Virus record (IMG/VR): IMGVR_UViG_3300032287_004484
Location: 226,275-290,274 of that record
DNA length: 64,000 nt
Reading direction: 5' to 3' (one strand)
Position 1 is the first letter of the stretch, and each line of letters begins with the position of its first letter. Below are positions 8,955 to 60,550 of this stretch, in pieces. The position numbers and the translations under genes were made by a program. The notes beneath the pieces were generated by a model. The model made no database searches. It was not told where the DNA came from and was given only the letters and a program-made list of their open reading frames with translations.

Positions 8955-9158
8955 ATGAATAATTATACTTATAAAATTGAATATAATCGTTATAATTTAG
9001 GTGATTTTTTAGTAGAATTTATAGATGGTAAAAAAAATAATGTTTGGATATTAGAAGATTTATTTAATTCAAGTGAAGTACTTGGTACAAAGCGTTATGA
9101 TGCAACTTTAAGAGCAAAGGAATATATAAGAAAAAATCATCCTGAATTATTACTATGA
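8955..9158 (+). CDS. small accessory protein with C-terminal tag (HPELLL)
   Basis: 67 aa; similar in size and ending to 60015..60215. Confidence 0.7.
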   Translation: MNNYTYKIEYNRYNLGDFLVEFIDGKKNNVWILEDLFNSSEVLGTKRYDATLRAKEYIRKNHPELLL

Positions 9159-9360
9159 AATATATATATAAAATTGAAAGTGATGCTATTATTGAAATTG
9201 GGGAGATACAAATTCGTTGGCTTTTTAAAGAATTACAAAACAAATCATCATTAATAAAATTTAGAAAATTTTATTCTATTACAACAATAGAATCTTTTAA
9301 TAGAACACAGGATTTTTTTTAAATCATGTTATTAAAAATAATCCAGAATTAATCATATAA
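9155..9360 (+). pseudogene. disrupted small accessory gene ending NNPELII
   Basis: ATG overlaps the preceding stop; frame stops at TAA 9320-9322 just after a T8 run, while a family-type NNPELII* end follows at 9340-9360. Confidence 0.5.
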
Positions 9361-9404
9361 TATTTTTTATATACTGATTACTTTTTAGGTTTAATCGTTA
9401 GTTT
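9361..9404 (+). repeat. 44-bp direct repeat copy 1 (contains promoter motif)
   Basis: tattttttatatactgattactttttaggtttaatcgttagttt; one mismatch to 10150-10193. Confidence 0.9.
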
Positions 9405-9453
9405 GTATTTATTATATTATTAACTAAAATAGTAACAAATAAAGGAGACAACT

Positions 9454-10092
9454 ATGAATAAATTACAAATACTTACAATTAAAGATTTAAATAAACAAGA
9501 TCTAAAGAATAAAGATTTTGATCTTTTAGATATTAAAAAATCCATTAATTATGCAGCAGCTAGAAAAATAAGAATTAAAGAATTAGAACAAGAGGTTATT
9601 AAAGATGCAGACTTAGCGTTAAAATATGCTAGTTCAGTTATACGTGGAGAATGGTTAGAGGGCGAAGATATTATTAGTTCAAACATTAATGCTTCAACAC
9701 GTTACGCTAAACTTGTAATAAGTAAAAGATTTACAAAAGCTGAACCTTTAATTTTACAAGAATGTTATCCTACGTTATATTATGTAAGAACGATAATAAA
9801 ACAAAGATTTCCAGAAGGTGAACAAATAATAGCATCTAAACCAGATAGTGCTTATATATATGCTAAAGAATATATTTTTAGCAGATGGCCAGAAGCAGAA
9901 AAAACTATTAGTACAAATGCAGAGTATTCCTTTCTTTATGCTGAGTTTATTAATGATAAATTTCCAATGGCTCATAAGACAATTTTTACATCTTCTAATT
10001 CTGAATGGAGAAATAAATATCTTAATCTTCTTGAAAAGCTACGAATTAATACTCAAGAAATTAAAGATGAATATATTGAATTTTTATTATGA
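9454..10092 (+). CDS. alpha-solenoid repeat protein (about 24-aa YA..VI.GRW.EGE..I repeat), tagged
   Basis: About six internal repeats; ends YIEFLL. Confidence 0.75.
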   Translation: MNKLQILTIKDLNKQDLKNKDFDLLDIKKSINYAAARKIRIKELEQEVIKDADLALKYASSVIRGEWLEGEDIISSNINASTRYAKLVISKRFTKAEPLILQECYPTLYYVRTIIKQRFPEGEQIIASKPDSAYIYAKEYIFSRWPEAEKTISTNAEYSFLYAEFINDKFPMAHKTIFTSSNSEWRNKYLNLLEKLRINTQEIKDEYIEFLL

Positions 10093-10149
10093 ATTAAAAG
10101 AATTATTAGTAGGGATAATTATTCAATTATCCCTAAATTTTTAATATGA

Positions 10150-10193
10150 TATTTTTTATATACTGATTACTTTTTAGGTTTAGTCGTTAGTTT
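10150..10193 (+). repeat. 44-bp direct repeat copy 2
   Basis: Matches 9361-9404 except aatcg/agtcg. Confidence 0.9.
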
Positions 10194-10232
10194 CTAATTA
10201 TTATACAATTTAACTATAAGGAGAAAAAGTAT

Positions 10233-10463
10233 ATGATAAAACCAAAAGAAATTAGAAAAGAAGAAATAGACCTCAAGGGTTCTCAAGGTAATGCTTTTTA
10301 TATTATTGGAGCAGGAAAGAATCTTCATAGAGATCTTACAAGAGGAGGAATAGAGTTGCCTCCTTGGGAAGAAATAAGAAAAGACATGACGAGTTCAGAT
10401 TATAATCACTTAACACGAGTTTTTGATAAGTATTTTGGCGATTATGTTGATTTAGTTTATTAA
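10233..10463 (+). CDS. conserved small phage protein
   Basis: IDLKGSQGNAF motif; AGGAG SD. Confidence 0.7.
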   Translation: MIKPKEIRKEEIDLKGSQGNAFYIIGAGKNLHRDLTRGGIELPPWEEIRKDMTSSDYNHLTRVFDKYFGDYVDLVY

Positions 10464-10538
10464 AAAATATAAAGTTTTAATGTTTGAGTAATTGAATTTT
10501 TACTTAAACATTAAAACAACTTGGTATATAATAATAAT

Positions 10539-13558: not shown

Positions 13559-13897
13559 ATGACTAGAGATCACTCGTTTCAATCACAAATTGATTTAATT
13601 TTTGATTCTATGGATTGGAACAATATAGAAAAAATCTTTCATGTTTGTGATTATAAATATATGAAAAATTTACATGAAGAATATAATCCTGAAATAGAAG
13701 ATTTAAAAGAAATGAGTTATCATCTTTTAAAGGATTGCTATAATCTAGGTAAAAAGAAAAATATTAATATGATTATAGCAAGTGGAAGATTTGAAGCATC
13801 TTGGAATAATACAGATGAAACGTTGTGTTTGAAATTTATACCCGAAGAAAAAGAAATAATGTTAGATGAAAAAAATGAATCTATATATGTAACTTAA
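13559..13897 (+). CDS. conserved phage hypothetical protein
   Basis: IFDSMDWNNIEK...ASGRFEA pattern. Confidence 0.6.
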   Translation: MTRDHSFQSQIDLIFDSMDWNNIEKIFHVCDYKYMKNLHEEYNPEIEDLKEMSYHLLKDCYNLGKKKNINMIIASGRFEASWNNTDETLCLKFIPEEKEIMLDEKNESIYVT

Positions 13898-14208
13898 ATT
13901 AAAGATTCTGATTTTATATTAATTGTAGGATATTTTAATTTAGAATTTATTTTAGATTCTAAAACAGATTTTTCTAAACACGTTCTTAAAGATAAAAGAT
14001 ATGTTATTTTATGGACTTCTAATTCAACGTATTCATCGTCGTGATTATAAAGATATTCTTCTATATCCATTTCAAGTTTTTCACAATAATTGATAGCATT
14101 TTTATGAATAAAATTAACTAACTGATCTTTATTAAGATCAGTTTTAATTTTATAAAAAATAACATCGTTTGAATTATCAAGTGAATCTATATAGTAGAAG
14201 TTTTTCAT
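13894..14208 (-). CDS. accessory protein, paralog of 14205..14561, ends ESLI
   Basis: Shared FYY.D....V.FYKI.TDL motif. Confidence 0.65.
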   Translation of the reverse strand: MKNFYYIDSLDNSNDVIFYKIKTDLNKDQLVNFIHKNAINYCEKLEMDIEEYLYNHDDEYVELEVHKITYLLSLRTCLEKSVLESKINSKLKYPTINIKSESLI

Positions 14209-14561
14209 TCTAAATCCTCTTTGTTTATTTCCATATTTATAAAATCAAGTTTAGAAGTTAAACGTTCTTCAGATCTAAATTTACTTAGAAAAGTTTGAAG
14301 TGAAAAAACATAATTAAAATTTCCAGCATCAACATCAAAAGTAAAATAATCTGGATTTTCACATTGACCTTCACTGAAATAAGATTCTTTAATTCCTAAT
14401 CTATTGGCTTCTATTTTTGCTTGCTTTTTTAAAAGTGATCTTAAACTTTTCAAAGATAAATCTGTTTCTATTTTATAAAAAACAGGTAACTCTCTTATTA
14501 CGTCTAAATAGTAAAAAGTATTTTTTTTCATAGTTTTATCCTCTTTTTTTAAATCATCCAT
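14205..14561 (-). CDS. accessory protein, paralog of 13894..14208
   Basis: Shared FYY.D....VFYKIETDL motif. Confidence 0.65.
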   Translation of the reverse strand: MDDLKKEDKTMKKNTFYYLDVIRELPVFYKIETDLSLKSLRSLLKKQAKIEANRLGIKESYFSEGQCENPDYFTFDVDAGNFNYVFSLQTFLSKFRSEERLTSKLDFINMEINKEDLE

Positions 14562-14866
14562 TGTAATAATTTTTTTTCATCATACTTATTATTCTTTTTT
14601 AAAAATTCTATATAATCATCTTTATATTGAGATTTAAAAATAGTATGATGACCTTTTTCAAAAATATCTTCTAATATATTAATAGCATAAAAATAAGATA
14701 CGTATGCATCTTTAGAAATAACTTCTTCTCCTTCATCCCAAGCTCCTTTAATCATATACATAGCATAATAAAAAGATTGCTCAGCATCAGTAGCAATAAT
14801 TTTTTCTAGTTCTGTTATTCTTTTATCCATAGATAAACTTTTATGTAAAGCTTCAATAGGTGTCAT
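14549..14866 (-). CDS. solenoid-repeat family protein (ends LLQWMI)
   Basis: MTPIEAL...RITELEKIIATD..QSFYYA...IKGAWDEGEEVI. Confidence 0.75.
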   Translation of the reverse strand: MTPIEALHKSLSMDKRITELEKIIATDAEQSFYYAMYMIKGAWDEGEEVISKDAYVSYFYAINILEDIFEKGHHTIFKSQYKDDYIEFLKKNNKYDEKKLLQWMI

Positions 14867-15156
14867 ATTAGGTGTTCTATTAATTTTAATTGATTTAAAA
14901 CACTTTTTAATCTTCTAAAGACAAGATTATTTTCTTTTATTATAAAATATTGTTCTTGATTGATTAATAATTTAAAATCCCAATTAATATCATTTAATAA
15001 TTTATGATTATTAGAAATGATATTTTGTCCATTCTCAAAATAAATTTCTGTTTCAGTATTTTCCTGATTTACAAGAACATAATTTTTTATTAAGCAATCT
15101 GAATCTAAATAACTTTTTGATGTTTTTATACAAAGAAAATAATTCATATCACCCAT
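14863..15156 (-). CDS. small tagged accessory protein (LIEHLI)
   Basis: ATGA-coupled chain of three genes. Confidence 0.65.
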   Translation of the reverse strand: MGDMNYFLCIKTSKSYLDSDCLIKNYVLVNQENTETEIYFENGQNIISNNHKLLNDINWDFKLLINQEQYFIIKENNLVFRRLKSVLNQLKLIEHLI

Positions 15157-15467
15157 TCATGTAGATTAAATTTACCTAAAAAATCAACTTTATTTTTATT
15201 TAAAACATCTTCTTTAAAATTTAGTTTTAAAAGTTCTTCAAAAAGATCTTTATTATTTATCTTTATAGAAAGATTAAATTTAATTTTCAATTCATATTTA
15301 AAATCATTTTGGTTCTTGGTTTTCTCTTGTTTAGAATCTGAAAAATAAGAATATCCATTATAAACTAGATAATTTTCTTTATCAACATAATGATATAAAA
15401 CGCAGGTAATAATTTTATCGTTAAATAAATTAAGACACAAATAAGCGTTTATTTTATTTTTATTCAT
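15144..15467 (-). CDS. small tagged accessory protein (LHEWVI)
   Basis: First gene behind the minus-strand promoter at 15495-15511. Confidence 0.65.
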   Translation of the reverse strand: MNKNKINAYLCLNLFNDKIITCVLYHYVDKENYLVYNGYSYFSDSKQEKTKNQNDFKYELKIKFNLSIKINNKDLFEELLKLNFKEDVLNKNKVDFLGKFNLHEWVI

Positions 15468-15642: not shown

Positions 15643-16800
15643 ATGAGGAATTTAGAAAAAATATTAGACCTTTGTCAAAAATCCGACAATTCAGTCTTAT
15701 TAAAGGGACCTCACGGAATAGGGAAGAGTGAAAGAGTAGAAGCATTCGCAAAAGAAAAAGGTTATCATTGCGAAATTTTATTTCTTTCTCACCAAGAAAC
15801 TGGAGATTTAATTGGTATTCCATATTTAGAAAATGGAAATACCGTATGGAGTACACCAATCTGGTTACAAAGAATTTATGATGCTTCTAAGAATGGAAAA
15901 ACGTGTGTATTATTCTTAGATGAATTAAACAGAGCAAGATTAGATGTTAGACAATCTGCTTTACAGTTAGTATTATCTAAGCAAATTCACCAGCACGTAC
16001 TTCCAAAAGATTCTTTAGTAGTAGCAGCAGTTAATCCAGAAGATGATTACCAAGTGTCTGAATTAGATCCAGCACTTTTAGATAGATTTGAAGCTATTGA
16101 ATTGAAAGCAAACACTGAAGAGTGGATTGAATGGGCTAGAAAAAAGTCAGTCAATGAAACAGTAGTTTCTTTTGTAGCAGATAATCCAGATAAATTGTGG
16201 TTCAAAACTAACAATGAAAATGAAATCAACCATCCTACTCCAAGAAGCTGGGTAAAAGTATCTAATTTTCTAAAAGTTTTAGAACTTGAAAAAGAAGCAG
16301 ATGAGGAAAAATTCTTTTTACTTCAAACTTTTGTAAATGGAAAGATTGGTAGAAGCGTTGGTAATCAATTTTCTATTTATTGGAAAGAAAAACAAGCACT
16401 TTCTATGGAAAGTATTGAAAAAGCAATTAAGAAAATTAAGAATAGGAAGAAAGAAAACATGGACGAAGCTATGGAGATACTAAAACCAGTTCTCTCTACT
16501 ATCGAAGTCATAAAACTTTCTCTTATTGGAGAGGACTTACTTAAAAAGTATATTCCAAAAACAGCTACTATTGCAACAATAGATAAAGCATTTGAAACCG
16601 CTTTTCCAGTTATGGCTTTTTTCTATTCTTTAGAATTAGAAGTTTCACATTCTATTCTAAAAGGTCTTAAAGAAAAAGACGATGAAAATATGAAAGAATT
16701 ATACGCTGGTTTAGCTCGTTGTGATTCAGCAGCTGCTGGAAAATTTAGAGAAAAAGAAATTTTCCGAAGGATTATAGATAAATTCGACAACAAGAAATAA
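15643..16800 (+). CDS. MoxR-like / dynein-related AAA+ ATPase
   Basis: GPHGIGKS, LFLDELNRA, AAVNP, LDPALLDRF, TPRSW. Confidence 0.92.
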   Translation: MRNLEKILDLCQKSDNSVLLKGPHGIGKSERVEAFAKEKGYHCEILFLSHQETGDLIGIPYLENGNTVWSTPIWLQRIYDASKNGKTCVLFLDELNRARLDVRQSALQLVLSKQIHQHVLPKDSLVVAAVNPEDDYQVSELDPALLDRFEAIELKANTEEWIEWARKKSVNETVVSFVADNPDKLWFKTNNENEINHPTPRSWVKVSNFLKVLELEKEADEEKFFLLQTFVNGKIGRSVGNQFSIYWKEKQALSMESIEKAIKKIKNRKKENMDEAMEILKPVLSTIEVIKLSLIGEDLLKKYIPKTATIATIDKAFETAFPVMAFFYSLELEVSHSILKGLKEKDDENMKELYAGLARCDSAAAGKFREKEIFRRIIDKFDNKK

Positions 16801-16823
16801 CTAATCCTTATTTCAATCTTCTT

Positions 16824-16860
16824 GGAAGCCACTACTTTTTTAGTGGCTCCTATTTTTTTT
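16824..16860 (+). terminator. intrinsic terminator after the AAA+ gene
   Basis: GCCACTA/TAGTGGC stem followed by a T-run. Confidence 0.75.
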
Positions 16861-16970
16861 ATTTTAAATGTTATTTTTTTAGGTTTAATCACTTGTAATT
16901 ATTATTAGTATAATTTATATTATGGAACAAAAAATAATTGAAAATAGAAAATATTTAATAGGAGGATACT

Positions 16971-18317: not shown

Positions 18318-18608
18318 ATGAATCAAAAAGAATATACATTATCAATTAAAATAAATGATAATCAAAAAATAATAGGATTATCTGTATTTGACGCTAAAAA
18401 CAATTTAAAATATACAGGTGAAAAAATAATTAAAGATTATAGTTCAGACTTATCGTTTTATTTAGCAAATTTTCAAAGTGACCCACATCTAATTAATATA
18501 GATGAAAAAACTTTTAATCAATTTTTAAAAGCTGATTTTAGAGATATTAAAGATATGTTTTTAATTGATTTTTATAAAAAATATAATTTTGAAGAATTTA
18601 TTTTATAA
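18318..18608 (+). CDS. small tagged accessory protein (FEEFIL)
   Basis: Convergent with 18603..18923. Confidence 0.65.
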   Translation: MNQKEYTLSIKINDNQKIIGLSVFDAKNNLKYTGEKIIKDYSSDLSFYLANFQSDPHLINIDEKTFNQFLKADFRDIKDMFLIDFYKKYNFEEFIL

Positions 18609-18923
18609 ACACCACTCCTCTAATCCATTATAAATTAAAAACGTTTTTAAATCTATTTTTCTATAATCTTTTCTTTTTAAATTTAGAACTTTAAAAAATA
18701 AAACTTTATTTATTGGAACAAAAAAATCTAAATTTAATTTAAAAAAAAGTAAATTTCCTTTCATTGAAAATTCGTTTGGATTATCTAAAAAAAAAATATC
18801 TCCTTTGTTTTTATCGTACACTCTAATGGATGATATTTTTTCATTTTTTAAAGTAAAACCAAGGTAATAATTTTCTTTCATGTGTTTTAATATATTAAGT
18901 GTTTTATTTTTAGGTTTAAACAC
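18603..18923 (-). CDS. small tagged accessory protein (LEEWCL); true start probably MKENYY
   Basis: Track start lies inside the promoter motif at 18908-18924. Confidence 0.6.
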   Translation of the reverse strand: MFKPKNKTLNILKHMKENYYLGFTLKNEKISSIRVYDKNKGDIFFLDNPNEFSMKGNLLFFKLNLDFFVPINKVLFFKVLNLKRKDYRKIDLKTFLIYNGLEEWCL

Positions 18924-20730: not shown

Positions 20731-21027
20731 ATGAATGATTATATTAGTGTCTCAAAATTTAACGATTCTGTTATTATTTACATTTATAGAAAAAATTATG
20801 TTTATTCAAATCTTATTATTACTTTTATGAATCCAACTAAATATTTAACTCTTAGAAGGAAATTAAAAAATAATTGGTTTGTATATTACACGACTATGCC
20901 TTTTACAAAAAATAAAAATCAACTTATAAATAAAGATAAACTTAGGTATTTATTATCTATTTCTTTTAATAAAGAAAACAATAGTAATTTTCATGTAGAA
21001 CATGGCTTTGAGGAGTATTTTATATAA
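20731..21027 (+). CDS. small tagged accessory protein (FEEYFI)
   Basis: C-terminal tag. Confidence 0.65.
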   Translation: MNDYISVSKFNDSVIIYIYRKNYVYSNLIITFMNPTKYLTLRRKLKNNWFVYYTTMPFTKNKNQLINKDKLRYLLSISFNKENNSNFHVEHGFEEYFI

Positions 21028-24200: not shown

Positions 24201-24208
24201 ATTATGAT

Positions 24209-53461: not shown

Positions 53462-53842
53462 ATGAGAAAGTCAACAAGAAATAAAACAACTTATTCAAGA
53501 GCTCAAAGGGCTTTAGAAATATGTCGTGAGTATAACAAAAGAATCCATAAACTTGAAAAAATAATTGCATCTGAAGAAGATACCGCTTATGTTTATGCTT
53601 TAGACGTAGTAGGAGGATCTTTTCCAGAGGGAGAAGCAATTATTCTTAAAAATCCACAACTTGCAACAGAGTATGCTTTTTATGTTTTAGATGCACCCTT
53701 TGAAAAAGGACATCCAGTTATTTTTAATTCAAAAAATGATCAAGACTGTATAGATGATTATGTGGATTTCTTAATTGAAAAAGGATATAGTAAGGAAAAA
53801 ATTGATTCGCTTTTAATTCAATATTCTCATCAATTAATATGA
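53462..53842 (+). CDS. solenoid-repeat family protein
   Basis: RIHKLEKII...YVYALDVVGGSFPEGE. Confidence 0.75.
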   Translation: MRKSTRNKTTYSRAQRALEICREYNKRIHKLEKIIASEEDTAYVYALDVVGGSFPEGEAIILKNPQLATEYAFYVLDAPFEKGHPVIFNSKNDQDCIDDYVDFLIEKGYSKEKIDSLLIQYSHQLI

Positions 53843-54015
53843 ATAAAAGTGATTTTTCTTTAAAAGAAAATAAATATATTGATGATAATCTGACTTCAAT
53901 AAGAGCATCAATAGATTTTTTAATAGAAGAAAGATTTATTTACTATGATAATTCTTATGTATATAAAGATATGTTAAAGTGGTTAAAAAAATATCATTCT
54001 GAATTAATTATTTAA
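53839..54015 (+). CDS. 58-aa tagged protein (HSELII), not in track
   Basis: Hand translation; ATGA overlap with the previous stop. Confidence 0.65.
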   Translation: MNKSDFSLKENKYIDDNLTSIRASIDFLIEERFIYYDNSYVYKDMLKWLKKYHSELII

Positions 54016-54785: not shown

Positions 54786-54992
54786 ATGGATATTAAAAAA
54801 AGAAAAATCATATGGGAATCACTAGTAGTAGACATAAACAAGAAAAGAATTTTTTATAAAACTGAAGATCACTATCATCATTTCTTAAATGTTGCGTTTA
54901 AAGATTTGTTGATACTAGAGAAAGATGCTCCAGAACATTATAAAATTTTTCAAGAAATTTTATATCGTAATTATGGGGAGTGGATAATATGA
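54786..54992 (+). CDS. small tagged protein (YGEWII)
   Basis: First gene of a long tagged-gene array. Confidence 0.65.
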   Translation: MDIKKRKIIWESLVVDINKKRIFYKTEDHYHHFLNVAFKDLLILEKDAPEHYKIFQEILYRNYGEWII

Positions 54993-55378
54993 CCCCTAGA
55001 CAAGCACTTGATAAAATTATTAAAAACAATAAAAGATCTTGTAGATTAGAAAAAATAATTGCACAAGATCCAGAATCTTCTTTTCTTTATGCTTGTCATT
55101 TAAACGAAAGATTCGTTCAAGGAGAAGAAGCGATAATCATTAGTGTATATCATACTCATCACTATATTGAAGAAATAGTAAGGGCTCCTTTTCCAAAAGG
55201 AGAAAAGATTATTTCCACAGAACCATTTTATTCTTATCGTTATGCAAAAAATATATTAAAAAATGTATTTCATCTCGCTCATCCAGTTATTTTTAAATCT
55301 TCATTTAAAAATGATTATATAAATTTCTTAAAATCTATTAATTATGATCTTAATGAAATAGGAGAATGGTTAATATGA
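54989..55378 (+). CDS. solenoid-repeat family protein (IGEWLI)
   Basis: MTPRQAL start at 54989. Confidence 0.75.
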   Translation: MTPRQALDKIIKNNKRSCRLEKIIAQDPESSFLYACHLNERFVQGEEAIIISVYHTHHYIEEIVRAPFPKGEKIISTEPFYSYRYAKNILKNVFHLAHPVIFKSSFKNDYINFLKSINYDLNEIGEWLI

Positions 55379-55691
55379 CTCCTAAAGAAGCCTATATTAA
55401 ATGTTATAATGAAAATCGTAGAATACCTGAATTAGAAAATATTATTGCTACTGATTCATATTATTCTTATCGTTATGCTAGTGATGTAATTAGAGGAAGA
55501 TGGGAAAGCCGTGAAAAAAATATTGCTACACATTCAGAATATTCTTATTATTATGCTCATTATGTAATTAAAGGTCCATTCAATTTATGTCATCCAATTA
55601 TTTTTAGTTCTATTTATAAAAACGATTATATAAACTTTTTAAAATCTATCAATTATGATCTTAATGAAATAGGAGAATGGTTAATATGACT
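55307..55691 (+). repeat. 74-bp direct repeat pair (55307-55380 and 55618-55691)
   Basis: Both encode KNDYINFLKSINYDLNEIGEWLI* plus the next ATG; four differences, all synonymous. Confidence 0.9.
55375..55689 (+). CDS. solenoid-repeat family protein (IGEWLI)
   Basis: MTPKEAY start at 55375. Confidence 0.75.
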   Translation: MTPKEAYIKCYNENRRIPELENIIATDSYYSYRYASDVIRGRWESREKNIATHSEYSYYYAHYVIKGPFNLCHPIIFSSIYKNDYINFLKSINYDLNEIGEWLI

Positions 55692-55731: not shown

Positions 55732-56049
55732 ATGAATTATAAGATCAAAAAGATAAATAAAAAAATAATGTTAAATACTCCTTACTATTTAGAAATAACT
55801 TCTGATAGTCTTAATAAAATTGATAGTTTTATTTTATATGATTTCAATGAAAAACTTTGTTTTTTTGGAACATATGAAATTAAAAATTATTATGATAGTT
55901 TTGATGAATCTCAAAAAACAAAACAATATAAAATTCCAATTTCAAAAAGACTGTTTAATGATTTTTTAAAATTATCAATACATAATTTACGAGAAACTAA
56001 TAAAAACATTTTTCTTGCTCTAAATGGATTAGAAGAGTGGATCATATGA
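55732..56049 (+). CDS. small tagged accessory protein (LEEWII)
   Basis: C-terminal tag. Confidence 0.7.
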   Translation: MNYKIKKINKKIMLNTPYYLEITSDSLNKIDSFILYDFNEKLCFFGTYEIKNYYDSFDESQKTKQYKIPISKRLFNDFLKLSIHNLRETNKNIFLALNGLEEWII

Positions 56050-56333
56050 GAAAATTGTTTATTGTAACAATTAATGATATGTATAAGAAAATTAGTCAAG
56101 ATGAAAAATTTTTTAATGGCAATTTAATTCATACGATATATACATATGATGATTATAATATTAATGAAGTAGCATCTTATTTATCATTATCAATTGATTT
56201 TATTAAAAAGCATACAATCTTTATTGATGAAAATGTTTTTACTAAAATAAATACTTATGGAATTATGAAAAAACACCATATTAATATTAAGGATTTTTTT
56301 GAAAAAATATCTTTAGAAGAACACTTAATATGA
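56046..56333 (+). CDS. small tagged accessory protein (LEEHLI)
   Basis: ATGA-coupled start at 56046. Confidence 0.65.
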   Translation: MRKLFIVTINDMYKKISQDEKFFNGNLIHTIYTYDDYNINEVASYLSLSIDFIKKHTIFIDENVFTKINTYGIMKKHHINIKDFFEKISLEEHLI

Positions 56334-56800
56334 CTCCTAAAATAGCTTTTTTTATTTCTTCATACGAAAATAAGAGATCTCCTAAATTAGAAAATATTAT
56401 TTCTACTGACGCTAATTATTCTTATCAGTATGCTCTTCACGTTGTTAAAGGTAAATGGAGAAAAGGAGAAAATATAATTATTACAAGTCCTTATTATTCT
56501 TACTTATATGCCCTTCATATTGTTAAAGGTAAATGGATAAAAGGAGAAGAAGTAATTTCTAATGATTCAGAGTGTTCTTATCATTATGCCAAAGATATAA
56601 AAATAGGAAGATTTAAAAAAGGAGAAAAAAGTATTATTAAAAATCCAAAATATTCTTACTGGTATATAAAGTACGTTGTCAAAAAACCATTGCCACAATT
56701 TAATAAAATAATTTTTAATTCTAAATTTTTACAAGACTATATACAATTTTTACAAAACAACAATTACAACATTAACAAATTTTCTGAATATATGATATAA
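56330..56800 (+). CDS. solenoid-repeat family protein (FSEYMI)
   Basis: Four YA.H.VKG.W.KGE repeats. Confidence 0.8.
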   Translation: MTPKIAFFISSYENKRSPKLENIISTDANYSYQYALHVVKGKWRKGENIIITSPYYSYLYALHIVKGKWIKGEEVISNDSECSYHYAKDIKIGRFKKGEKSIIKNPKYSYWYIKYVVKKPLPQFNKIIFNSKFLQDYIQFLQNNNYNINKFSEYMI

Positions 56801-56810: not shown

Positions 56811-57182
56811 ATGGCTACAAGATCAACAATTTCAATTTTAAAAAAATATGGAACATTAAAATCAATCTATTGTCACTGGGATGGGTATTTAGAAGGAGTA
56901 GGAGAAACGTTAATTGTAAACTATAAAACGCCTCAACAAGTAGATGAACTTATTGAAAATGGCGATGTTTCTTGTTTAGGATCAACGATAAATGAAACAG
57001 ATTTTTATCATGAAAAAGATAGTCGTATTGCTTATTTAGAATATAAAAGTTTAGATGAACCAGGATATTTTCATTCTTTACAAGATTATAATTACATTTA
57101 TAAGGAACAAGAACAAAGATGGGAATATTTTCGTTGGTACGAAATAAATAAAATGACTTGTTTCTTACACCATTTGATTTAA
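56811..57182 (+). CDS. YCHWDGY-family protein with tag-like end (FLHHLI)
   Basis: Paralog of 40920..41264. Confidence 0.75.
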   Translation: MATRSTISILKKYGTLKSIYCHWDGYLEGVGETLIVNYKTPQQVDELIENGDVSCLGSTINETDFYHEKDSRIAYLEYKSLDEPGYFHSLQDYNYIYKEQEQRWEYFRWYEINKMTCFLHHLI

Positions 57183-57259: not shown

Positions 57260-57281
57260 ATAATATATAGGATAAAATAAT

Positions 57282-58175
57282 ATGAATAAATATAACTATA
57301 AATACGATCACATAATAAAAATTGATGACCAAATTTTAAAAGAAGATTTTTACGAAATTGTAAGAAAGCATAAAGTTAATAGAAAAAGAGATTTAAATTT
57401 AGAGGAAAGAATTTTAAAGAGTCAAAATCCTTTATTAGCTGTTTTCTATGCTAGAGAAGTTGTAATGGATAGATGGATAGAAGGCGAAGATATAATTTTT
57501 AACTTTCCTTCTGATCAATCTATTTATTTTTATTTAACTTTTTTGATAGAAAATAAAGTTAGAGATCTTGAAGATTTATTTCCAAAATTAGAAAAATGTA
57601 TGGTAGAGTTTAAGGATTTTATGGCTATTAGATATTATATCTCTAGTGTAATTAAAAGAAGATGGAAAGAAGGTGAAGACGCTATTATTGAATGTAAATC
57701 TCTTAACGATATTAATTGGTATTCTAAATATTATATTAAAGGTAGATGGAAAGAGGGAGAACAAGTTTTTTTAGAAGAAATAACAAATATAAACTTTTCT
57801 AGCCATTTGCACTTCCACCTTGTTTACCAATTATCTTATTATATAGATAAAATCGCTAAATGTAAAATTGACGATATTGATAAAGAGATTATTAAAAATA
57901 TGAAATATTTTTGCGAGAAATATCCTCATGTAAATATTTTTAGATATATAAATGGAGCACATCCAAAAGGTTGGGAAGAAGCAGAAGAGTTTATTGTTCT
58001 TGATGCTAACCTTAGTGTTATGTATGCAATGAAAATTATAAAAAGACCTTTTGTAAAAGCACATCAAAATATCTTTAGTTCTAAAACAGATAAAAGAATT
58101 ATAAATCGCTATACAAATTTTCTCAATAAATTAAGTAAAAAGAAAACAGTAAACTTCTCAGAGTTCTTAATTTAA
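57282..58175 (+). CDS. long solenoid-repeat family protein (FSEFLI)
   Basis: About eight repeats (VMDRWIEGE, IKRRWKEGE, IKGRWKEGE). Confidence 0.75.
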   Translation: MNKYNYKYDHIIKIDDQILKEDFYEIVRKHKVNRKRDLNLEERILKSQNPLLAVFYAREVVMDRWIEGEDIIFNFPSDQSIYFYLTFLIENKVRDLEDLFPKLEKCMVEFKDFMAIRYYISSVIKRRWKEGEDAIIECKSLNDINWYSKYYIKGRWKEGEQVFLEEITNINFSSHLHFHLVYQLSYYIDKIAKCKIDDIDKEIIKNMKYFCEKYPHVNIFRYINGAHPKGWEEAEEFIVLDANLSVMYAMKIIKRPFVKAHQNIFSSKTDKRIINRYTNFLNKLSKKKTVNFSEFLI

Positions 58176-58177
58176 AA

Positions 58178-58708
58178 ATGAAAACTTTATATTTATTAGA
58201 AAATAAAAAGATAAAAGAGAAATATAATAATTTTCTAATTAAAAATAATGTTTTTTATTCTTATCAATATTATCTTGGATCAGGAGATGAAGGAGACGCT
58301 TTTATGGTTTCTGATTCTGAAATAAGAGGAGTTATAAAATTAACAACTAGAAGATTAGAATATAAGATTTCTAAAAAATTAATTAAGAATCAATATCTTA
58401 ATCTTTGTACAGTATATGATTGTAATATTTTAAGTCCTAATGAATTATATGTTATTTATAAAAAGTTTTATTTTGTTAATTCTATAACATCTGATTTAGT
58501 TGATTTTGCTTTAAAAAATAAAGATTTAAATAATTTTGGACTTATTGGTTTTGAATTAAAAAAGATTAAAAGTCAATTAAAAGAATTTGGATTAAGTGAT
58601 GGAGGTGATTTATGGGGTGGTAATGTAGGATGGGATAAAAATAAATTAGTTCACTTTGATATAGATGAAACTGTTTATGGAACGTATAAAGAAAGTTTTT
58701 TAGAATAA
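58178..58708 (+). CDS. minimal protein-kinase-like-fold enzyme
   Basis: LGSGDEG (Gly loop), VIK, DLWGGNV (catalytic loop), FDID (metal binding). Confidence 0.65.
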   Translation: MKTLYLLENKKIKEKYNNFLIKNNVFYSYQYYLGSGDEGDAFMVSDSEIRGVIKLTTRRLEYKISKKLIKNQYLNLCTVYDCNILSPNELYVIYKKFYFVNSITSDLVDFALKNKDLNNFGLIGFELKKIKSQLKEFGLSDGGDLWGGNVGWDKNKLVHFDIDETVYGTYKESFLE

Positions 58709-58753
58709 ACACTTTTATATTTTGTATATATATTATATATAAAGGAATATTAA

Positions 58754-58945
58754 ATGACAAAAAAAGAAGCAACTAGAATTTTAAACATTAGATTAGAAGC
58801 TCTTAATGAAGCAATTAAAAGAAAGGCAATTAAAACTGATATTACTGGTAAAATAATTGATCAATCAGTTTTTGATTACCTTAATGAATTAGAGGAAAGA
58901 AGAAAAGCACCTCCAATAAATTGGATTAAAAGAAATGAATTTTAA
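58754..58945 (+). CDS. excisionase-like HTH protein, tandem paralog 1
   Basis: TKKEATRILNI...LEERR. Confidence 0.65.
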   Translation: MTKKEATRILNIRLEALNEAIKRKAIKTDITGKIIDQSVFDYLNELEERRKAPPINWIKRNEF

Positions 58946-58961
58946 AAGGATAAAAAAATAA

Positions 58962-59180
58962 ATGGAAACAACAATAGAAAAACAAACAATAACTAAAAAA
59001 GAGGCATGTGATATTTTACAAATTAAAAAACACACATTAAATAATCTTATTAAAAGTAAAATAATATCTTCTTTTAACGAAGAAGTTATTTTTTCTTCTG
59101 TTTTTAAATATAAAAAAGAATTAGAAGAAAGAAGATCAATTAACAAACCAATGTGGATAAATAGAGGCGGATATGGTTGA
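58962..59180 (+). CDS. excisionase-like HTH protein, tandem paralog 2
   Basis: TKKEACDILQI...LEERR. Confidence 0.65.
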   Translation: METTIEKQTITKKEACDILQIKKHTLNNLIKSKIISSFNEEVIFSSVFKYKKELEERRSINKPMWINRGGYG

Positions 59181-59508
59181 ATCTAAAAAAGAAACTTACT
59201 TATATATGGGAATATCGTTAGATAAATTTTCTAATGATCCAACAGATAAAATTTCCATGATAGACTTTTATAATTCTTTTAATCAACAAATATATTCTCA
59301 TTGTTCTACAAGTTTTAAAAATAAAGAAAGATTCACGTTTCAAAAACTTGGAGATAACTTTACTTTTGAAGAATGGAGAACTGGACATGATATTATTATT
59401 CCTATTACAAAAGAAAAATTTGATATGATAAAACAGATTAACATTCTTAATCATAAAAGTTTAAAAAAGTTTTTAAGATCGTTTAGTTTTGAGGAGTACA
59501 TTATATAA
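59173..59508 (+). CDS. small tagged accessory protein (FEEYII)
   Basis: C-terminal tag. Confidence 0.7.
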   Translation: MVESKKETYLYMGISLDKFSNDPTDKISMIDFYNSFNQQIYSHCSTSFKNKERFTFQKLGDNFTFEEWRTGHDIIIPITKEKFDMIKQINILNHKSLKKFLRSFSFEEYII

Positions 59509-60018
59509 ATGATAAAAATATTAATTGCTAATACACATTCTAAAATAGATTTTGAATCAGTCGATAAATCAGAAAAGAAAGAATTTATTAAAATGCTGAA
59601 AGAAAAATTTACAGTTAGAAATCCATCGCTAGAAAGAAACCCTATGGTAATAAGAGGACTAATGAGTGCTGATCATTGTTTTTACGACGTTGAAAACTCT
59701 ATTCTTCCAACTGGTTTAGTTCCACATCTTAGAATTTATTCTAAACAAAATAATTTTCAAATTGAAATTAAAGACTTTAGAAAATTTCCAAAACAAAACC
59801 AAAACATATTAGATGGGATCAACGATAAACAAATTAAAATGGGAATTCACGAAGCAAGGGATTACCAAATAGATGCTCTAGCTGATTTAGTTAAATATCG
59901 TGGAGGAATAATGGAGGGAGGAACTGGAATGGGTAAATGTCTTGGTAAATCAACAGAGATTGAAATAGAAGTTGATGATGACTTTTATTCATTTCTAATA
60001 AAACATAATTTTATATGA
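59509..60018 (+). CDS. uvsW: UvsW-like SF2 helicase N-fragment fused to a 26-aa split-intein IntN
   Basis: ARDYQ (Q motif), GGTGMGK then CLGKSTEIEIEV...; Cys1 at 59938. Confidence 0.9.
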   Translation: MIKILIANTHSKIDFESVDKSEKKEFIKMLKEKFTVRNPSLERNPMVIRGLMSADHCFYDVENSILPTGLVPHLRIYSKQNNFQIEIKDFRKFPKQNQNILDGINDKQIKMGIHEARDYQIDALADLVKYRGGIMEGGTGMGKCLGKSTEIEIEVDDDFYSFLIKHNFI

Positions 60019-60215
60019 AAAATCAATATACAATAGAATATGATAAGATGATTAAAAATTACCAAGTCAGTTGTGTAGGAAAATTTAACTTTAGTGCATC
60101 GCTAGGATATTTAAAAAATCTTGATAACCAAAGCATGTGGAAAGAAAAAAAATTAGAATATTATTTTGAACTTCTTGATTGGGTAGAAAAAGAACACCCA
60201 GAGTTATTAATATGA
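60015..60215 (+). CDS. small tagged protein (HPELLI) between the helicase halves
   Basis: ATGA overlap with the IntN stop. Confidence 0.7.
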   Translation: MKNQYTIEYDKMIKNYQVSCVGKFNFSASLGYLKNLDNQSMWKEKKLEYYFELLDWVEKEHPELLI

Positions 60216-60550
60216 ATGATTCAGAATGGGATGAAATGATTGCTTGGTGTCCAACACAATTAAGTAAAAGAGTTTATGTCGAAGGAATAGAGTTAATTCT
60301 TTATTTAAGATGGAGATGGAATGATCCGTTCACTTATAACATTTATATTGAAGAAGATAAAAAAGAATTAGAAGAACTTCTAAAAATAGGGATGTTTCAT
60401 TATGATTTATTTAATAAGTATAATCGTTGGTATTCACAAAAAGATTTTGATAAAGATAAAATAGAAAGGGATGCAGAAGATATTTGGTATAACTTCGAGA
60501 AGTCAAGGATAGAAAAAATTTTAAAAGATAATCCGCATTTAATAATTTAA
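60212..60550 (+). CDS. accessory protein (NPHLII) between the helicase halves
   Basis: WCPTQ...YLRWRW motif; start 60212. Confidence 0.65.
   Translation: MNDSEWDEMIAWCPTQLSKRVYVEGIELILYLRWRWNDPFTYNIYIEEDKKELEELLKIGMFHYDLFNKYNRWYSQKDFDKDKIERDAEDIWYNFEKSRIEKILKDNPHLII

What the first reader, a model, noticed from the sequence alone, without database searches (positions are those of the whole stretch)
8955..60550. About 30 unrelated accessory proteins share a C-terminal E-x-x-[I/L]-COOH tag
Seen: I count 32 ORFs (one via a frameshift) with Glu at -4 and Ile/Leu at -1, often [L/F]-E-E-[W/Y/H/F]-x-[I/L]: e.g. ELLL 9158, EFLL 10092, EHLI 14863, EWVI 15144, EFIL 18608, EWCL 18603, EYFI 21027, EWQI 22048, EWTL 22326, EYLI 23159, EHLL 23880, EWSI 38307, EWII 41280, EWLI 55378 and 55689, EYMI 56800, EFLI 58175, ELLI 60215. 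Five near misses also occur (QWMI, QDYI, HQLI, HHLI, HLII). The tag spans at least three non-homologous families, while core enzymes lack it. Assuming typical residue frequencies, only a few would be expected by chance (rough estimate). SD plus ATGA coupling could create E-x-x-I, but the tag persists at convergent ends (18603/18608, 30434), before promoters (23159) and where the next gene has its own SD (41280). Inference: a shared docking or degradation signal, such as a degron for the phage ClpP-like or a host PDZ/AAA+ protease, or a hub-binding peptide like the C-terminal LDFL(L/F) gp45 clamp motif of T4 gp33/gp55/gp43. I know of no described system like this.
Basis: partly seen in the sequence, partly recalled or inferred. 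Interest (0 to 1): 0.9.

Follow-up and report, generated by a model that had tools for sequence, protein, structure and literature searches.

The report
Shared C-terminal tail on phage proteins
In a very AT-rich jumbo phage, and in sampled regions of at least three related phages, about 30% of ORFs (all small proteins of unknown function, from at least three unrelated families) end in the same tail (hydrophobic-x-Glu-aromatic-hydrophobic-Ile/Leu), which is kept as protein sequence and also doubles as the next gene's ribosome-binding site; its function is still unknown.

Summary
In the window, 32 of 125 ORFs end E-x-x-[I/L], against about 2 expected. The adjacent 10 kb of the same phage adds 33 of 38. 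Across eight loci of this clade (24-27% GC) the count is 110 of 368. An outgroup phage and T4/CP220 controls show almost none.

"About 30 unrelated proteins" is overstated. The carriers fall into three amplified families (A helical-repeat, B about 100 aa alpha/beta, C about 65-85 aa) plus a few small lineages. These three families are mutually undetectable by profile comparison once the tails are removed.

Translational coupling contributes. At ATGA-overlapped stops the Glu codon is GAG in 57% of cases (background 12%) and the last codon is ATA. At uncoupled stops the tag persists (26 of 173, p about 1e-17) with background codons, so the amino acids are under selection. In family A the tail is a lineage-specific add-on.

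What the tail does was not tested. I favour a C-terminal docking peptide read in trans (about 0.4) over an intramolecular capping helix seeded by RBS overprinting (about 0.35).

The parts
9454..10092 (+). Family A (helical repeat), 212 aa, tail ..EFLL. A vestigial ATGA start is followed by a 2-codon ORF.
   Evidence: BLAST cluster; tail-less HMM membership; junction DNA
21267..21773 (+). Family A, 168 aa, tail ..VEYLL, overlap-coupled
30114..30434 (+). Family A short form, 106 aa, tail ..FQEHLI. Convergent with the RNA ligase gene, so uncoupled.
54980..55378 (+). Family A, tail ..NEIGEWLI. The likely true start is the ATGA at 54989.
55366..55689 (+). Family A, tail ..NEIGEWLI (likely start 55375). 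This protein was the AF2 target.
56330..56800 (+). Family A, 156 aa, tail ..SEYMI. The next gene has its own GGAG after the stop.
57282..58175 (+). Family A, 297 aa, tail ..SEFLI
14549..14866 (-). Family A near miss, tail ..LLQWMI (Gln instead of Glu)
53462..53842 (+). Family A near miss. An internal ..DSLLI is followed by a 7-aa extension that again ends tag-like (..HQLI).
14863..15156 (-). Family B (about 100 aa, alpha/beta), tail ..LIEHLI. First sequence of the AF2 model.
15144..15467 (-). Family B, tail ..LHEWVI
18318..18608 (+). Family B, tail ..FEEFIL. Convergent with 18603-18923; the two stops share the palindrome TTATAA.
18603..18923 (-). Family B, tail ..LEEWCL, convergent and uncoupled
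23159..23494 (-). Family B, tail ..LEEYLI, uncoupled
23491..23883 (-). Family B, tail ..LYELVI
24318..24626 (-). Family B, tail ..LLEAYI, uncoupled
25314..25658 (-). Family B, tail ..LFELII, uncoupled
37999..38307 (+). Family B, tail ..MIEWSI, uncoupled
41280..41615 (-). Family B, tail ..FEEWII. The next gene has its own AGGAG after the stop.
55732..56049 (+). Family B, tail ..LEEWII
59173..59508 (+). Family B, tail ..FEEYII
20731..21027 (+). B-like by architecture only (not significant by HMM), tail ..FEEYFI
21770..22048 (+). B-like by architecture only, tail ..LQEWQI
22036..22326 (+). B-like (marginal), tail ..LEEWTL
56037..56333 (+). B-like by architecture only, tail ..LEEHLI
8955..9158 (+). 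Family C (about 65-85 aa, MNYTY...W...KW..NHPELLL), tail ..NHPELLL
9155..9355 (+). Frameshifted family C pseudogene. The second frame ends ..NNPELII.
60015..60215 (+). C-like, tail ..EHPELLI
53839..54015 (+). C-like, tail ..YHSELII, uncoupled
60179..60550 (+). C-like near miss, tail ..DNPHLII
23880..24221 (-). Coiled-coil-like protein outside A/B/C, tail ..ENNLSEHLL. A 113-aa ORF in L007 (13414-13755) ends with a similar tail (..ENLSEHAI); BLAST found no similarity between the two bodies.
41612..41980 (-). Singleton, 122 aa, tail ..KAELLI
54786..54992 (+). Singleton, 68 aa, tail ..YGEWII
13894..14208 (-). Weak form ..SESLI. A weak paralog (14205-14561, BLAST E 0.003) ends ..KEDLE; two 106-aa ORFs at the corresponding place in L013 (8667-8987, 8984-9304) end ..TEDLI and ..SEDLI, with no homology test run.
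39560..39922 (+). Weak form ..IENFI, possibly a chance match
45360..45653 (+). Weak form ..IENKI, probably a chance match
25655..26023 (-). Near miss, tail ..MQDYI
56811..57182 (+). Near miss, tail ..LHHLI (paralog of 40920-41264, which ends ..FKKL)
43751..44335 (+). ClpP-like protease with Ser/His/Asp aligned to solved ClpPs. A candidate partner only; no link to the tag has been shown.
15643..18230 (+). MoxR AAA+ (15643-16800) and VWA/DUF2201 (16971-18230) pair, flanked by family B genes here and in relatives. A candidate partner only.

Best explanation
**What is shown.** The tag is a strictly C-terminal motif: Phi(-6)-x-E(-4)-[W/Y/F/H/L](-3)-Phi(-2)-[I/L](-1)-COOH. It sits on three sequence-unrelated, massively amplified families of small proteins of unknown function, plus a few minor lineages. 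These occur in a clade of 24-27% GC jumbo phages. Many of the genes lie in tightly packed tandem arrays.

**Dual coding (shown).** Where the stop overlaps the next start (..NNA TGA), the Glu codon is preferentially GAG. It lies 8 nt before the AUG and so serves as the downstream Shine-Dalgarno core. The last codon (ATA/TTA/CTA) supplies the A of the AUG. The amino acids are also selected in their own right: at stops with no downstream gene the tag persists with ordinary codon usage.

**Function (inferred, not shown).** I think the tail most likely works as a short C-terminal docking peptide or mini-helix read in trans by one common partner. Recognition would go through the free carboxylate, I/L(-1), the aromatic at -3 and the invariant Glu. 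That would give dozens of otherwise unrelated accessory proteins a common fate or location. The partner could be a protein hub or a protease/adaptor; the phage's own ClpP-like enzyme is one candidate. The partner is unidentified.
For: **Scale and specificity**
- 32 of 125 ORFs in the window carry the tag, against 2 expected.
- 33 of 38 ORFs in the adjacent 10 kb of the same genome carry it. One search shows that this array directly follows the window's last genes.
- 110 of 368 ORFs carry it across eight clade loci.
- Controls: 0 of 12 in the tail-gene region of the same phage; 2 weak and 0 strict of 32 in an outgroup phage; 0 of 96 in T4 and CP220 control regions, including 0 of 14 overlap-coupled genes.

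**Families are unrelated**
- Tail-less hhalign gives probability of 0.2% or less for A-B, A-C and B-C. The positive control, B (window) against B (array), gives 97.7%, E 1.9e-12.
- AF2 models differ: B is a beta sheet plus helices (pLDDT 84.5); A is all-helical (pLDDT 80.9).

**Selection acts on the protein**
- Uncoupled stops: 26 of 173 carry the tag (p 8e-18) and 19 of 173 the strict form (p 2e-31).
- At -4, GAG is used in 43 of 75 coupled tags (p 7e-21 against the 12% background) but in 4 of 26 uncoupled tags, which matches background.
- At -1, ATA is used in coupled tags and ATT in uncoupled ones.
- Uncoupled family-B genes beside the VWA gene in two other phages keep LEEW[I/T]I, with synonymous codon variation.

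**The tail is not part of the ancestral fold in family A**
- The repeat domain occurs in 5109 protein clusters. Of the best 150 hits, 11 end E-x-x-[I/L]: nine small proteins (104-171 aa) with the ..NYD...EW/Y.. tail and two larger proteins (756 and 852 aa) with unrelated tails (..TEEDI..DNEELL). The others stop at or near ..DYxxFLKS.. or end differently.
- Large family-A proteins in the same phages lack the tag.

**Conservation**
- Glu(-4) is the only invariant column in family B and the only column conserved at 90% or more in family C.
- Family B is tagged in 31 of 31 members and family C in 30 of 34.
- Position -1 is almost exclusively I or L.
- In both models the tail is a separate short helix after a break. 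In family A it has lower confidence than the body (pLDDT 66-78 against about 90).
Against: - No receptor was found and no binding or stability test was possible.
- In the family B model the tail helix has high confidence (block mean about 88). That is what one expects of a segment packed against the domain, not of a free linear motif.
- There is essentially no disordered linker before the tail, which is unusual for docking peptides and degrons.
- Part of the cross-family similarity has a simple RNA-level cause. All three families live in ATGA-coupled arrays, where an SD-like codon at -4 and an NUA codon at -1 are favoured. The families are therefore not independent samples for those two positions.
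- Tags on uncoupled copies could be inherited from arrayed ancestors and kept for folding reasons alone.
- Only about 84 kb of the 290-kb genome was examined.
Confidence: 0.4

Rival explanations
1. The tail is an intramolecular capping helix seeded by RBS overprinting. As these small genes were packed into ATGA-overlapped arrays, each ORF came to read through the next gene's ribosome-binding site. That gives Glu (GAG/GAA) at -4 and an NUA codon (Ile/Leu) at -1 in every family. The intervening residues then evolved to be hydrophobic, so that the new tail folds back as a mini-helix on the domain. Copies that later lost their downstream neighbour keep the tail because it is now part of the fold. 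Nothing reads the tail in trans.
For: - GAG is enriched about 5-fold at -4 only in coupled genes, and ATA at -1 occurs mainly in coupled genes.
- Untagged coupled genes also carry GGA/GAG/AGG at -5 to -3, and I/L at -1 in 11 of 20. In T4/CP220, I/L is at -1 in 9 of 14 coupled genes.
- 75 of the 110 tags are overlap-coupled.
- Several 'uncoupled' tags still carry a vestigial ATGA or TAATG start followed by a short dead ORF, for example 9454, 20731 and 23159.
- AF2 predicts the tail as a confident helix in family B. A cap helix after the last repeat of a two-repeat solenoid is structurally sensible for family A.
Against: - Coupling alone gives few tags: 0 of 14 in the T4/CP220 controls, and only 3 of 20 with Glu at -4 among untagged coupled genes of the clade. 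This compares with 60% tagged among coupled clade ORFs.
- It does not explain why -3, -2 and -6 are hydrophobic or aromatic rather than the Lys and Asn that dominate this proteome (K 11.6%, N 7.8%).
- It does not explain why a surface-type Glu is the single most conserved residue even in long-uncoupled family-B genes across genomes.
- It does not explain why -1 is restricted to I or L.
Confidence: 0.35
2. The tail mediates oligomerisation within or between the paralogs. Its short amphipathic helix would dock on a neighbouring subunit, or on the helical-repeat groove of family A proteins. The families would then assemble into mixed complexes.
For: - The hydrophobic stripe L(-6)/W(-3)/Phi(-2) suits helix-helix packing.
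- Family A is a TPR-like helical repeat by weak fold resemblance only (Sec17, FIS1; E above 7). Repeats of that kind often bind terminal peptides (general knowledge).
- The families are co-arrayed and probably co-expressed.
Against: - There is no direct evidence.
- The Foldseek matches are not significant.
- Family A proteins carry the tag themselves.
Confidence: 0.1
3. The tag is purely a nucleotide-level by-product (SD plus ATGA, or a conserved junction or recombination cassette), with no selection on the amino acids.
For: Same codon evidence as above. Both sides of array junctions are conserved (tail plus MNYTY or MTPKEA starts).
Against: - The tag persists at 26 uncoupled stops with background codon usage.
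- Synonymous sites vary freely between paralogs and orthologs: GAA/GAG, CAT/CAC, TTA/TTG/CTA, ATT/ATA.
- Some downstream genes have their own SD after the stop (41280, 56330).
- Trp (TGG), rare in a 24% GC genome, is enriched 8.5-fold at -3.
Confidence: 0.05
4. The motif [L/I]-x-E followed by three residues is a T4-type prohead-protease cleavage site or capsid-targeting signal, marking proteins that are packaged and trimmed in the head.
For: [L/F/I] at -6 and Glu at -4 resemble the L/I-x-E cleavage rule of the T4 gp21 protease. That rule is recalled from memory and was not tested here.
Against: - Family C has His or Tyr at -6.
- Removing three C-terminal residues has no known precedent.
- The carriers sit in accessory arrays away from the structural genes, which themselves lack the tag.
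Confidence: 0.03

Closest known systems
C-terminal sliding-clamp (gp45) binding tails of T4 gp43 and gp55 (SLDFL[F/Y])
   Same: Both are short acidic-plus-aromatic/hydrophobic peptides at or near the C-terminus. Both are shared by otherwise unrelated proteins so that all can dock on one hub. The pattern acidic-aromatic-Phi-Phi (D-F-L-F) compares with E-W-L-I.
   Different: - T4 gp43 ends ..SLDFLFG and gp55 ends ..SLDFLYEAND. The T4 motif is therefore not strictly terminal and has a different register.
- In T4 the carriers are a handful of replication and transcription proteins. Here they are over 100 small accessory proteins, while the replication proteins in the window (UvsX, gp32-like, polymerase-like fragment, helicase) lack the tag.
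- No clamp gene was seen in the 84 kb examined.
C-terminal degrons of AAA+ proteases (ssrA ..YALAA for ClpXP, MuA ..RRKKAI); recalled from memory
   Same: Both depend on a free C-terminus with a hydrophobic last residue. Such a tag can be appended to unrelated proteins. The phage encodes a ClpP-like protease with an apparently intact triad.
   Different: - The sequence differs: those degrons have no Glu at -4 or aromatic at -3, and the known ClpX motifs end in small residues or are basic.
- The tail here is predicted helical and lies directly against a folded domain.
- No unfoldase or adaptor has been identified, and turnover was not measured.
Class II PDZ ligands (Phi-x-Phi-COOH, e.g. ..EYFI, ..EYYV, ..EFYA of eukaryotic membrane proteins); recalled from memory
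   Same: The pattern is the same: E(-4), aromatic(-3), hydrophobic(-2), I/V/L(-1), read together with the free carboxylate. ORF 20731-21027 ends exactly ..EYFI.
   Different: Those are eukaryotic systems. Bacterial PDZ domains are mostly extracytoplasmic (general knowledge). No PDZ protein was found or searched for across the whole phage or host genome. The resemblance is of pattern only.
Imprint of a downstream Shine-Dalgarno sequence and ATGA overlap on the C-terminal codons of the upstream gene (general knowledge of operon architecture)
   Same: This imprint is demonstrably present here. GAG at -4 lies 8 nt before the overlapped AUG, and NUA occupies -1.
   Different: The usual imprint is a mild compositional bias. 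Here it coincides with a six-residue protein motif that is kept at uncoupled stops, across genomes and in three unrelated families. It is far more frequent than in coupled genes of T4, CP220 or non-family genes of the same clade.

Membership tests
Translational-coupling by-product (SD + ATGA) | Enrichment confined to stops that overlap or abut a downstream start | tested here: not met
   26 of 173 uncoupled clade ORFs are tagged against a 1.6% baseline (p 8e-18); the strict form is at 19 of 173 against 0.12%. The convergent pairs 18318/18603 and 30114 carry the tag.
Translational-coupling by-product (SD + ATGA) | Codon choice at tag positions biased towards SD-like or start-forming nucleotides | tested here: met
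   In coupled tags GAG is used in 43 of 75 against a 12% background (p 7e-21), and ATA at -1 in 38 of 43 Ile codons. In uncoupled tags GAG is used in 4 of 26 and ATT predominates. Coupling therefore shapes the codons but not the presence of the motif.
Translational-coupling by-product (SD + ATGA) | Comparable tag frequency in coupled genes of other AT-rich T4-like phages | tested here: not met
   0 of 14 overlap-coupled ORFs (0 of 96 in total) in 25 kb of T4 and 50 kb of Campylobacter phage CP220. This is a small sample.
One paralogous protein family with a conserved C-terminus | Detectable homology among all carriers outside the tail | tested here: not met
   hhalign of tail-less profiles gives probability of 0.2% or less for A-B, A-C and B-C, against 97.7% for the B/B2 positive control. 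The B-to-A HMM hit is no better than the best decoy. The AF2 topologies differ.
T4-type gp45 clamp-binding tail | Consensus S-L-D-F-L-[F/Y] at or near the C-terminus | tested here: not met
   T4 gp43 ends ..ASLDFLFG and gp55 ends ..SLDFLYEAND. The tag is [L/F]-x-E-[W/Y/H/F/L]-Phi-[I/L]-COOH, with a different register, and is strictly terminal.
T4-type gp45 clamp-binding tail | Carried by polymerase or late-transcription factors, with a gp45-like clamp encoded | tested here: inconclusive
   The replication proteins in the window lack the tag. No clamp was found in the ORFs scanned, but only about 84 of 290 kb were seen and not every ORF was scanned.
ClpXP/ssrA-like C-terminal degron | Terminal ..LAA-like or basic MuA-like sequence | tested here: not met
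   The tails end E-Omega-Phi-[I/L]. The degron consensus is recalled from memory.
ClpXP/ssrA-like C-terminal degron | Tag-dependent proteolysis by a Clp-type protease | not testable with these tools
   A ClpP-like gene is present at 43751-44335 (Pfam E 2.7e-26; Ser/His/Asp aligned). Stability cannot be measured here.
Class II PDZ ligand | Phi-x-Phi-COOH with a free carboxylate | tested here: met
   Position -3 is W/Y/F/H/L and -1 is I/L in 92 of 368 clade ORFs. This is a match of pattern only.
Class II PDZ ligand | A cognate PDZ-domain receptor in the same compartment | not tested
   No PDZ hit appeared among the 35 window proteins scanned with Pfam or in the Pfam columns of the fetched loci. 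The host is unknown.

The most novel reading that the evidence does not exclude
This clade of AT-rich jumbo phages may use a proteome-wide C-terminal 'address label' (Phi-x-E-Omega-Phi-[I/L]-COOH). The label sits on 65 small ORFs from unrelated families in the 84 kb of this phage examined so far (110 across eight loci of the clade). One receptor would read it and give these proteins a common fate, such as timed destruction by the phage's own ClpP-type protease or recruitment to a single hub. The same nucleotides serve as the ribosome-binding site and start of the next gene in the arrays.
Probability: 0.35. Interest if true: 0.85.

Novelty: new variant of a known kind. Interest (0 to 1): 0.62.

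Why it matters
Jumbo phages carry hundreds of small genes of unknown function, and there are few handles for studying them as a group. Here 110 of the 368 ORFs sampled in this clade, from at least three unrelated families, share one terminal peptide.

If that peptide is read in trans, a single pull-down with a synthetic tail could identify a central hub or protease pathway. It would also assign a common logic, such as timing, location or turnover, to dozens of orphan proteins at once.

Even if the tail is only structural, the locus is an unusually clean natural example of dual coding. One six-codon stretch serves at once as a conserved protein element, a Shine-Dalgarno sequence and a start-codon donor. 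The two layers can be separated by comparing coupled and uncoupled copies.

Tried and rejected
1. **Chance.** Rejected.
2. **Pure SD/ATGA artefact.** Rejected as the sole cause but shown to shape codon choice.
3. **One hidden superfamily.** An iterated tail-less family-B HMM pulled in family A. Against shuffled decoys this was drift: 14549 scored 15.1 and the best decoy 15.3. hhalign confirmed there is no relation.
4. **Known families.** Pfam and PHROGs gave nothing for A, B or C.
   - Foldseek of both models against the PDB, and of the family-B model against BFVD, gave no significant match.
   - ESM Atlas features for family B lean towards PD-(D/E)XK or restriction-endonuclease-like clusters, at 0.83-0.88 only. 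This is a lead, not a finding. Family C gave nothing.
5. **Recent DNA exchange of tails between families.** Similar tails differ at synonymous sites, for example 23880 against 30114. The family-A protein with an ..ELLL tail (L012 5591-5998) differs from ..EWLI at two of the last four codons (TGG/TTA and ATA/TTA), so point changes are enough to account for it.
6. **Finding relatives by single-protein pattern scans.** UvsX in IMG/VR found only the source contig. MoxR in JGI metagenomes found nothing. The full family-C alignment was too divergent to search with. Relatives were reached instead through cluster members and MoxR homologs.
7. **Distant homologs of 55732 and 30114.** Only near-identical proteins were returned.
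8. **Literature.** No paper describing such a motif turned up, and the sample accessions were not found.
9. **T4 prohead-protease site.** Judged unlikely (see rivals).
10. **One look-up returned gene calls but no DNA.** It was used only for gene order.

Full report
**What the window is.** The 64-kb window has 23.8% GC. It is the last 64 kb of a 290,274-bp viral contig, IMGVR_UViG_3300032287_004484. It encodes the following annotated genes:
- T4-like replication and repair genes: UvsX/RecA (51727-52908), a weak gp32-like hit (50775-51701), a helicase and a PD-(D/E)XK nuclease;
- an RNA-repair set: polynucleotide kinase-phosphatase (PNK) and two RNA ligases;
- a MoxR AAA+ / VWA-DUF2201 pair (15643-18230);
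- a ClpP-like protease (43751-44335);
- a Tad3 anti-Thoeris homolog (7840-8361);
- two tRNAs.

No cultured phage is close: megablast found nothing, and UvsX is 31.4% identical or less among the 15 matches listed.

**Checking the observation.** I called ORFs mechanically (125 non-overlapping ORFs of at least 40 aa). The frameshifted copy (9155-9355..NNPELII) is real. From the internal frequency of the same pattern, 2.0 are expected (p about 1e-28). The stricter E-[WYFHL]-x-[IL] pattern occurs 28 times against 0.28 expected. Trp is 8.5-fold enriched at -3 and Leu 2.8-fold at -6. No Pfam-annotated enzyme carries the tag.

**How many independent carriers are there?** Far fewer than about 30.
- *Family A.* BLAST links nine ORFs into a family with an internal helical repeat of roughly 34 aa (..YA..VIKGRW.EGE..I..).
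- *Family B.* Sixteen proteins of about 100 aa share an architecture: an N-terminal YYL.I...I..h.LYD motif and a C-terminal F..FL......L.EW.I motif. With the last eight residues removed, leave-one-out HMMs recover 8 of the 16 at rank 1 among 2625 real and shuffled sequences.
- *Family C.* This family runs MNYTY.I ... W ... R..KW...NHPELLL over about 65-85 aa.
- *Membership across all clade loci.* Tail-less HMMs with decoy-calibrated thresholds give A 36 members with 26 tagged, B 31 of 31 and C 30 of 34. A further 23 tagged ORFs lie outside these families.
- *ORFs outside the families.* Some recur as similar-length ORFs at corresponding places in different phages: the 82- and 83-aa ORFs ending ..YYGEEWNI in L013 and L014, and ..S/TE[D/S]LI. 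The ..NLSEH[L/A][L/I] pair (window 23880, L007 13414) shares only the tail.
- *The three big families are unrelated.* Tail-less hhalign gives probability of 0.2% or less for A-B, A-C and B-C. The window and array subsets of B match at 97.7%, E 1.9e-12. An apparent B-to-A link from HMM iteration scored no better than shuffled decoys.
- *Fold predictions.* AF2 gives a beta sheet plus helices for B (pLDDT 84.5, pTM 0.78) and an all-helical repeat for A (pLDDT 80.9). Neither has a significant structural neighbour. Pfam and PHROGs are silent.

**The phenomenon is much bigger than the window.**
- A pattern search for the family-C tail fetched positions 1-10054 of the same contig (L012). There, 33 of 38 ORFs are tagged. 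They sit in one same-strand, 4-nt-overlapping array of about 5 family-A, about 20 family-C and about 10 family-B genes.
- Gene order on another assembly shows that this array directly follows the window's last genes: the helicase, then a repeat-rich gene in which the contig broke.
- The 10 kb on the other side of the window holds an SbcC-like gene, the tail tube and the sheath. It has 0 of 12 tagged.
- Related jumbo phages were reached through cluster members and MoxR homologs (MoxR 58-64% identical; contigs of 102-399 kb; 23-27% GC). They carry the same families and tails: L003 7 of 32, L005 4 of 31, L007 18 of 45 (including an 11-gene family-C array), L013 7 of 44 and L014 9 of 41.
- The clade total is 110 of 368 ORFs, with 92 in the strict form.
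- An outgroup jumbo phage (MoxR 44% identical, 29.4% GC) has 2 weak and 0 strict of 32.
- Control regions of T4 (25 kb) and Campylobacter phage CP220 (50 kb, 27.6% GC) have 0 of 96.

**Is it translational coupling?** Partly.
- 75 of the 110 tags overlap the next start. The typical junction is ..GAG TGG TTA ATA TGA.. or ..CCA GAG TTA TTA TTA TGA AT...
- In coupled tags the Glu codon is GAG in 43 of 75, against a 12% background (p 7e-21). It lies 8 nt before the AUG, which is an SD-like position. The last codon is ATA, TTA or CTA, donating the A of the AUG.
- Untagged coupled genes show the same tendency in other ways: GGA, GAG or AGG at -5 to -3, and I/L at -1 in 11 of 20.
- Coupling cannot be the whole story, for four reasons:
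  1. 26 of 173 uncoupled clade ORFs carry the tag (p 8e-18) and 19 the strict form (p 2e-31).
  2. In the uncoupled tags the codons revert to background: GAG 4 of 26, ATT instead of ATA. This is the signature of selection on the amino acids.
  3. Family-B genes beside the VWA gene in L013 and L014 keep LEEW[I/T]I at plain TAA stops, with GAA/GAG variation.
  4. Coupled genes outside the families, and in T4 and CP220, almost never carry the full motif.
- Some tagged genes are followed by a gene with its own AGGAG after the stop (41280, 56330). Others are convergent: 18318 and 18603 share the palindromic TTATAA, and 30114 faces the RNA ligase gene.

**Is the tail part of the ancestral fold?** Not in family A.
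- The repeat occurs in 5109 clusters at 50% identity, including proteins with up to 27 matched stretches.
- Of the best 150 hits, 11 end E-x-x-[I/L]. Nine are small proteins (104-171 aa) ending ..NYD...[I/F]xE[W/Y][L/M][I/L]; two larger proteins (756 and 852 aa) end ..TEEDI and ..DNEELL and only match by pattern. Many others stop at or shortly after the preceding ..DYxxFLKS.. helix, or have other tails.
- Large family-A proteins (253-410 aa) in the same phages lack the tag.
- The tail is therefore an add-on of the arrayed small genes.
- One member (53462) has an internal ..DSLLI followed by seven extra residues that again end tag-like..HQLI.

**Shape and conservation.**
- Glu(-4) is the only invariant column in B and the only column conserved at 90% or more in C.
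- Position -1 is almost always I or L. Position -3 varies within each family among W, Y, F, H and L.
- Each family has its favourite version (A EWLI, C ELLL, B E[W/Y/H]II) but samples the same degenerate space. One family-A member has ..ELLL and one family-C member has ..EHLI.
- In both AF2 models the tail is a separate short helix after a 3-4 residue break. Block-mean pLDDT is about 88 in B and 66-78 in A.
- B, the short A forms and 23880 share a longer pattern: F(-12) L(-11) .. N(-8/-7) Phi(-6) x E Omega Phi Phi. It reads as helix, N-cap, terminal mini-helix.

**What it most likely is.**
- *Shown:* a dual-coded, strictly C-terminal protein motif that is under amino-acid selection. It is shared by at least three unrelated amplified families and is restricted to one phage clade.
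- *Inferred:* its function. I favour (about 0.4) a docking peptide read in trans by a common partner. The reasons are as follows:
  - an invariant surface-type Glu;
  - an I/L-only last residue at a fixed distance from the carboxylate;
  - the add-on nature of the tail in family A;
  - its recurrence on unrelated folds.
- *Main rival (about 0.35):* the array architecture overprinted each downstream RBS onto the upstream C-terminus. This seeded E..[I/L] in every family. The rest then became a hydrophobic capping helix that is now structurally indispensable. The confident tail helix in B, the absence of a linker and the absence of any identified receptor favour this view.
- *Minor rivals:* oligomerisation among the paralogs (0.1), a pure RNA-level artefact (0.05) and a prohead-protease or packaging signal (0.03).

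**Comparison with known systems.**
- *T4 clamp-binding tails.* They share the logic and a loose acidic-aromatic-Phi-Phi pattern. They differ in sequence, register, strictness of position and kind of carrier (gp43 ..SLDFLFG, gp55 ..SLDFLYEAND).
- *ssrA and MuA degrons.* They differ in sequence. A ClpP-like gene with aligned Ser/His/Asp is present, but nothing links it to the tag.
- *Class II PDZ ligands.* From memory (..EYFI, ..EYYV), these match the pattern best, but no receptor is known here.
- *SD imprint on upstream C-termini.* This known effect is present here in extreme form.
- *Literature.* I found no description of such a motif.

**Limits.**
- Only about 84 of 290 kb of this genome, and about 20-kb samples of its relatives, were examined.
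- Gene calls are mechanical.
- Paralogs are not independent observations. The family-level count is roughly 6-10 lineages.
- AF2 coordinates, multimer prediction and any experiment were unavailable.

Noticed in passing
window 7840-8361 (+): A 173-aa protein matches Pfam Tad3, the type I Thoeris inhibitor (E 2.8e-36, 124 bits). Homologs sit at the corresponding place in related phages (Pfam columns of L010 and L014). It looks like an anti-defence gene next to the tRNA genes.
   Followed up: partly
window 43751-44335 (+): A ClpP-like protease (PF00574, E 2.7e-26) whose best solved relatives are genuine ClpPs (E about 1e-16), with Ser, His and Asp aligned. It lies among accessory genes, not beside portal or capsid genes.
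   Followed up: partly
window 9454-10092, 14549-14866, 21267-21773, 53462-58175; proteins P0003-P0152: The family-A repeat (..YA..VIKGRWPEAEP.I..) is widespread: 5109 clusters at E of 0.001 or better, and proteins up to 2253 aa with 27 matched stretches. No Pfam family covers it; only weak HTH_35 hits appear.
   Followed up: partly
window 63756-64000 and L012 1-520: The contig ends inside a gene made of YYEENKDK-type repeats. On another assembly this 122-aa gene is followed directly by the 37-gene tagged array. The contig ends are therefore an assembly break in a repeat, and the genome map is probably circular or permuted.
   Followed up: partly
window 45004-45189 (-), 46104-46280 (+), 54449-54625 (-); also 18982-19413 and 45662-46072: Three paralogous ORFs of 58-61 aa are present, two of them followed by GC-rich hairpins (GGTGGGAT..ATTCCC; GTGGGGTT..AATCCCAC). 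Two paralogous ORFs of about 140 aa are also present. Related phages (L005, L013) repeat a 59-aa plus 134-aa gene pair several times. This may be a small mobile or repeated cassette.
   Followed up: no
window 31786-32979 and 32967-34130 (-): Two tandem paralogs (397 and 387 aa, 44% identical, no Pfam or PHROG hit) end ..SPDKWSKK and ..DSPDKWNI. A related phage has a similar pair ending ..GDSPDKWDIK and ..GDSPNKWDIK (L014 18934-21095). This is a second, different conserved C-terminus.
   Followed up: no
L003 8350-8766, L004 2854-4296, L013 14312-15598: IS605-type OrfB/TnpB (Cas12f-like) genes, full-length or truncated, are inserted beside the tagged arrays and beside the MoxR/VWA block in related phages. 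They are absent at those places in the window.
   Followed up: no
window 59509-60018 (+) to 60584-62116 (+): A 169-aa ORF with a P-loop-like GGTGMGK motif ends ..KHNFI. It is separated from a 510-aa ORF of unknown function by two family-C-like small genes. This could be a gene split by insertion of the small genes, but it was not checked.
   Followed up: no
L007 13971-15164 and 15161-17199: In the 349-kb relative, a Peptidase_M14 carboxypeptidase, a histidine-kinase-like ATPase and a C39-like peptidase lie immediately after tagged small genes. A carboxypeptidase is another conceivable reader or trimmer of hydrophobic C-termini.
   Followed up: no
window 28412-31444 and 42106-43116: An RNA-repair set is present: polynucleotide kinase-phosphatase (PNKP HAD domain, E 6.7e-49), an Rnl2-like ligase with a PHA02142 OB domain, and a T4 Rnl1-like ligase. 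This suggests defence against host tRNA or anticodon nucleases.
   Followed up: no
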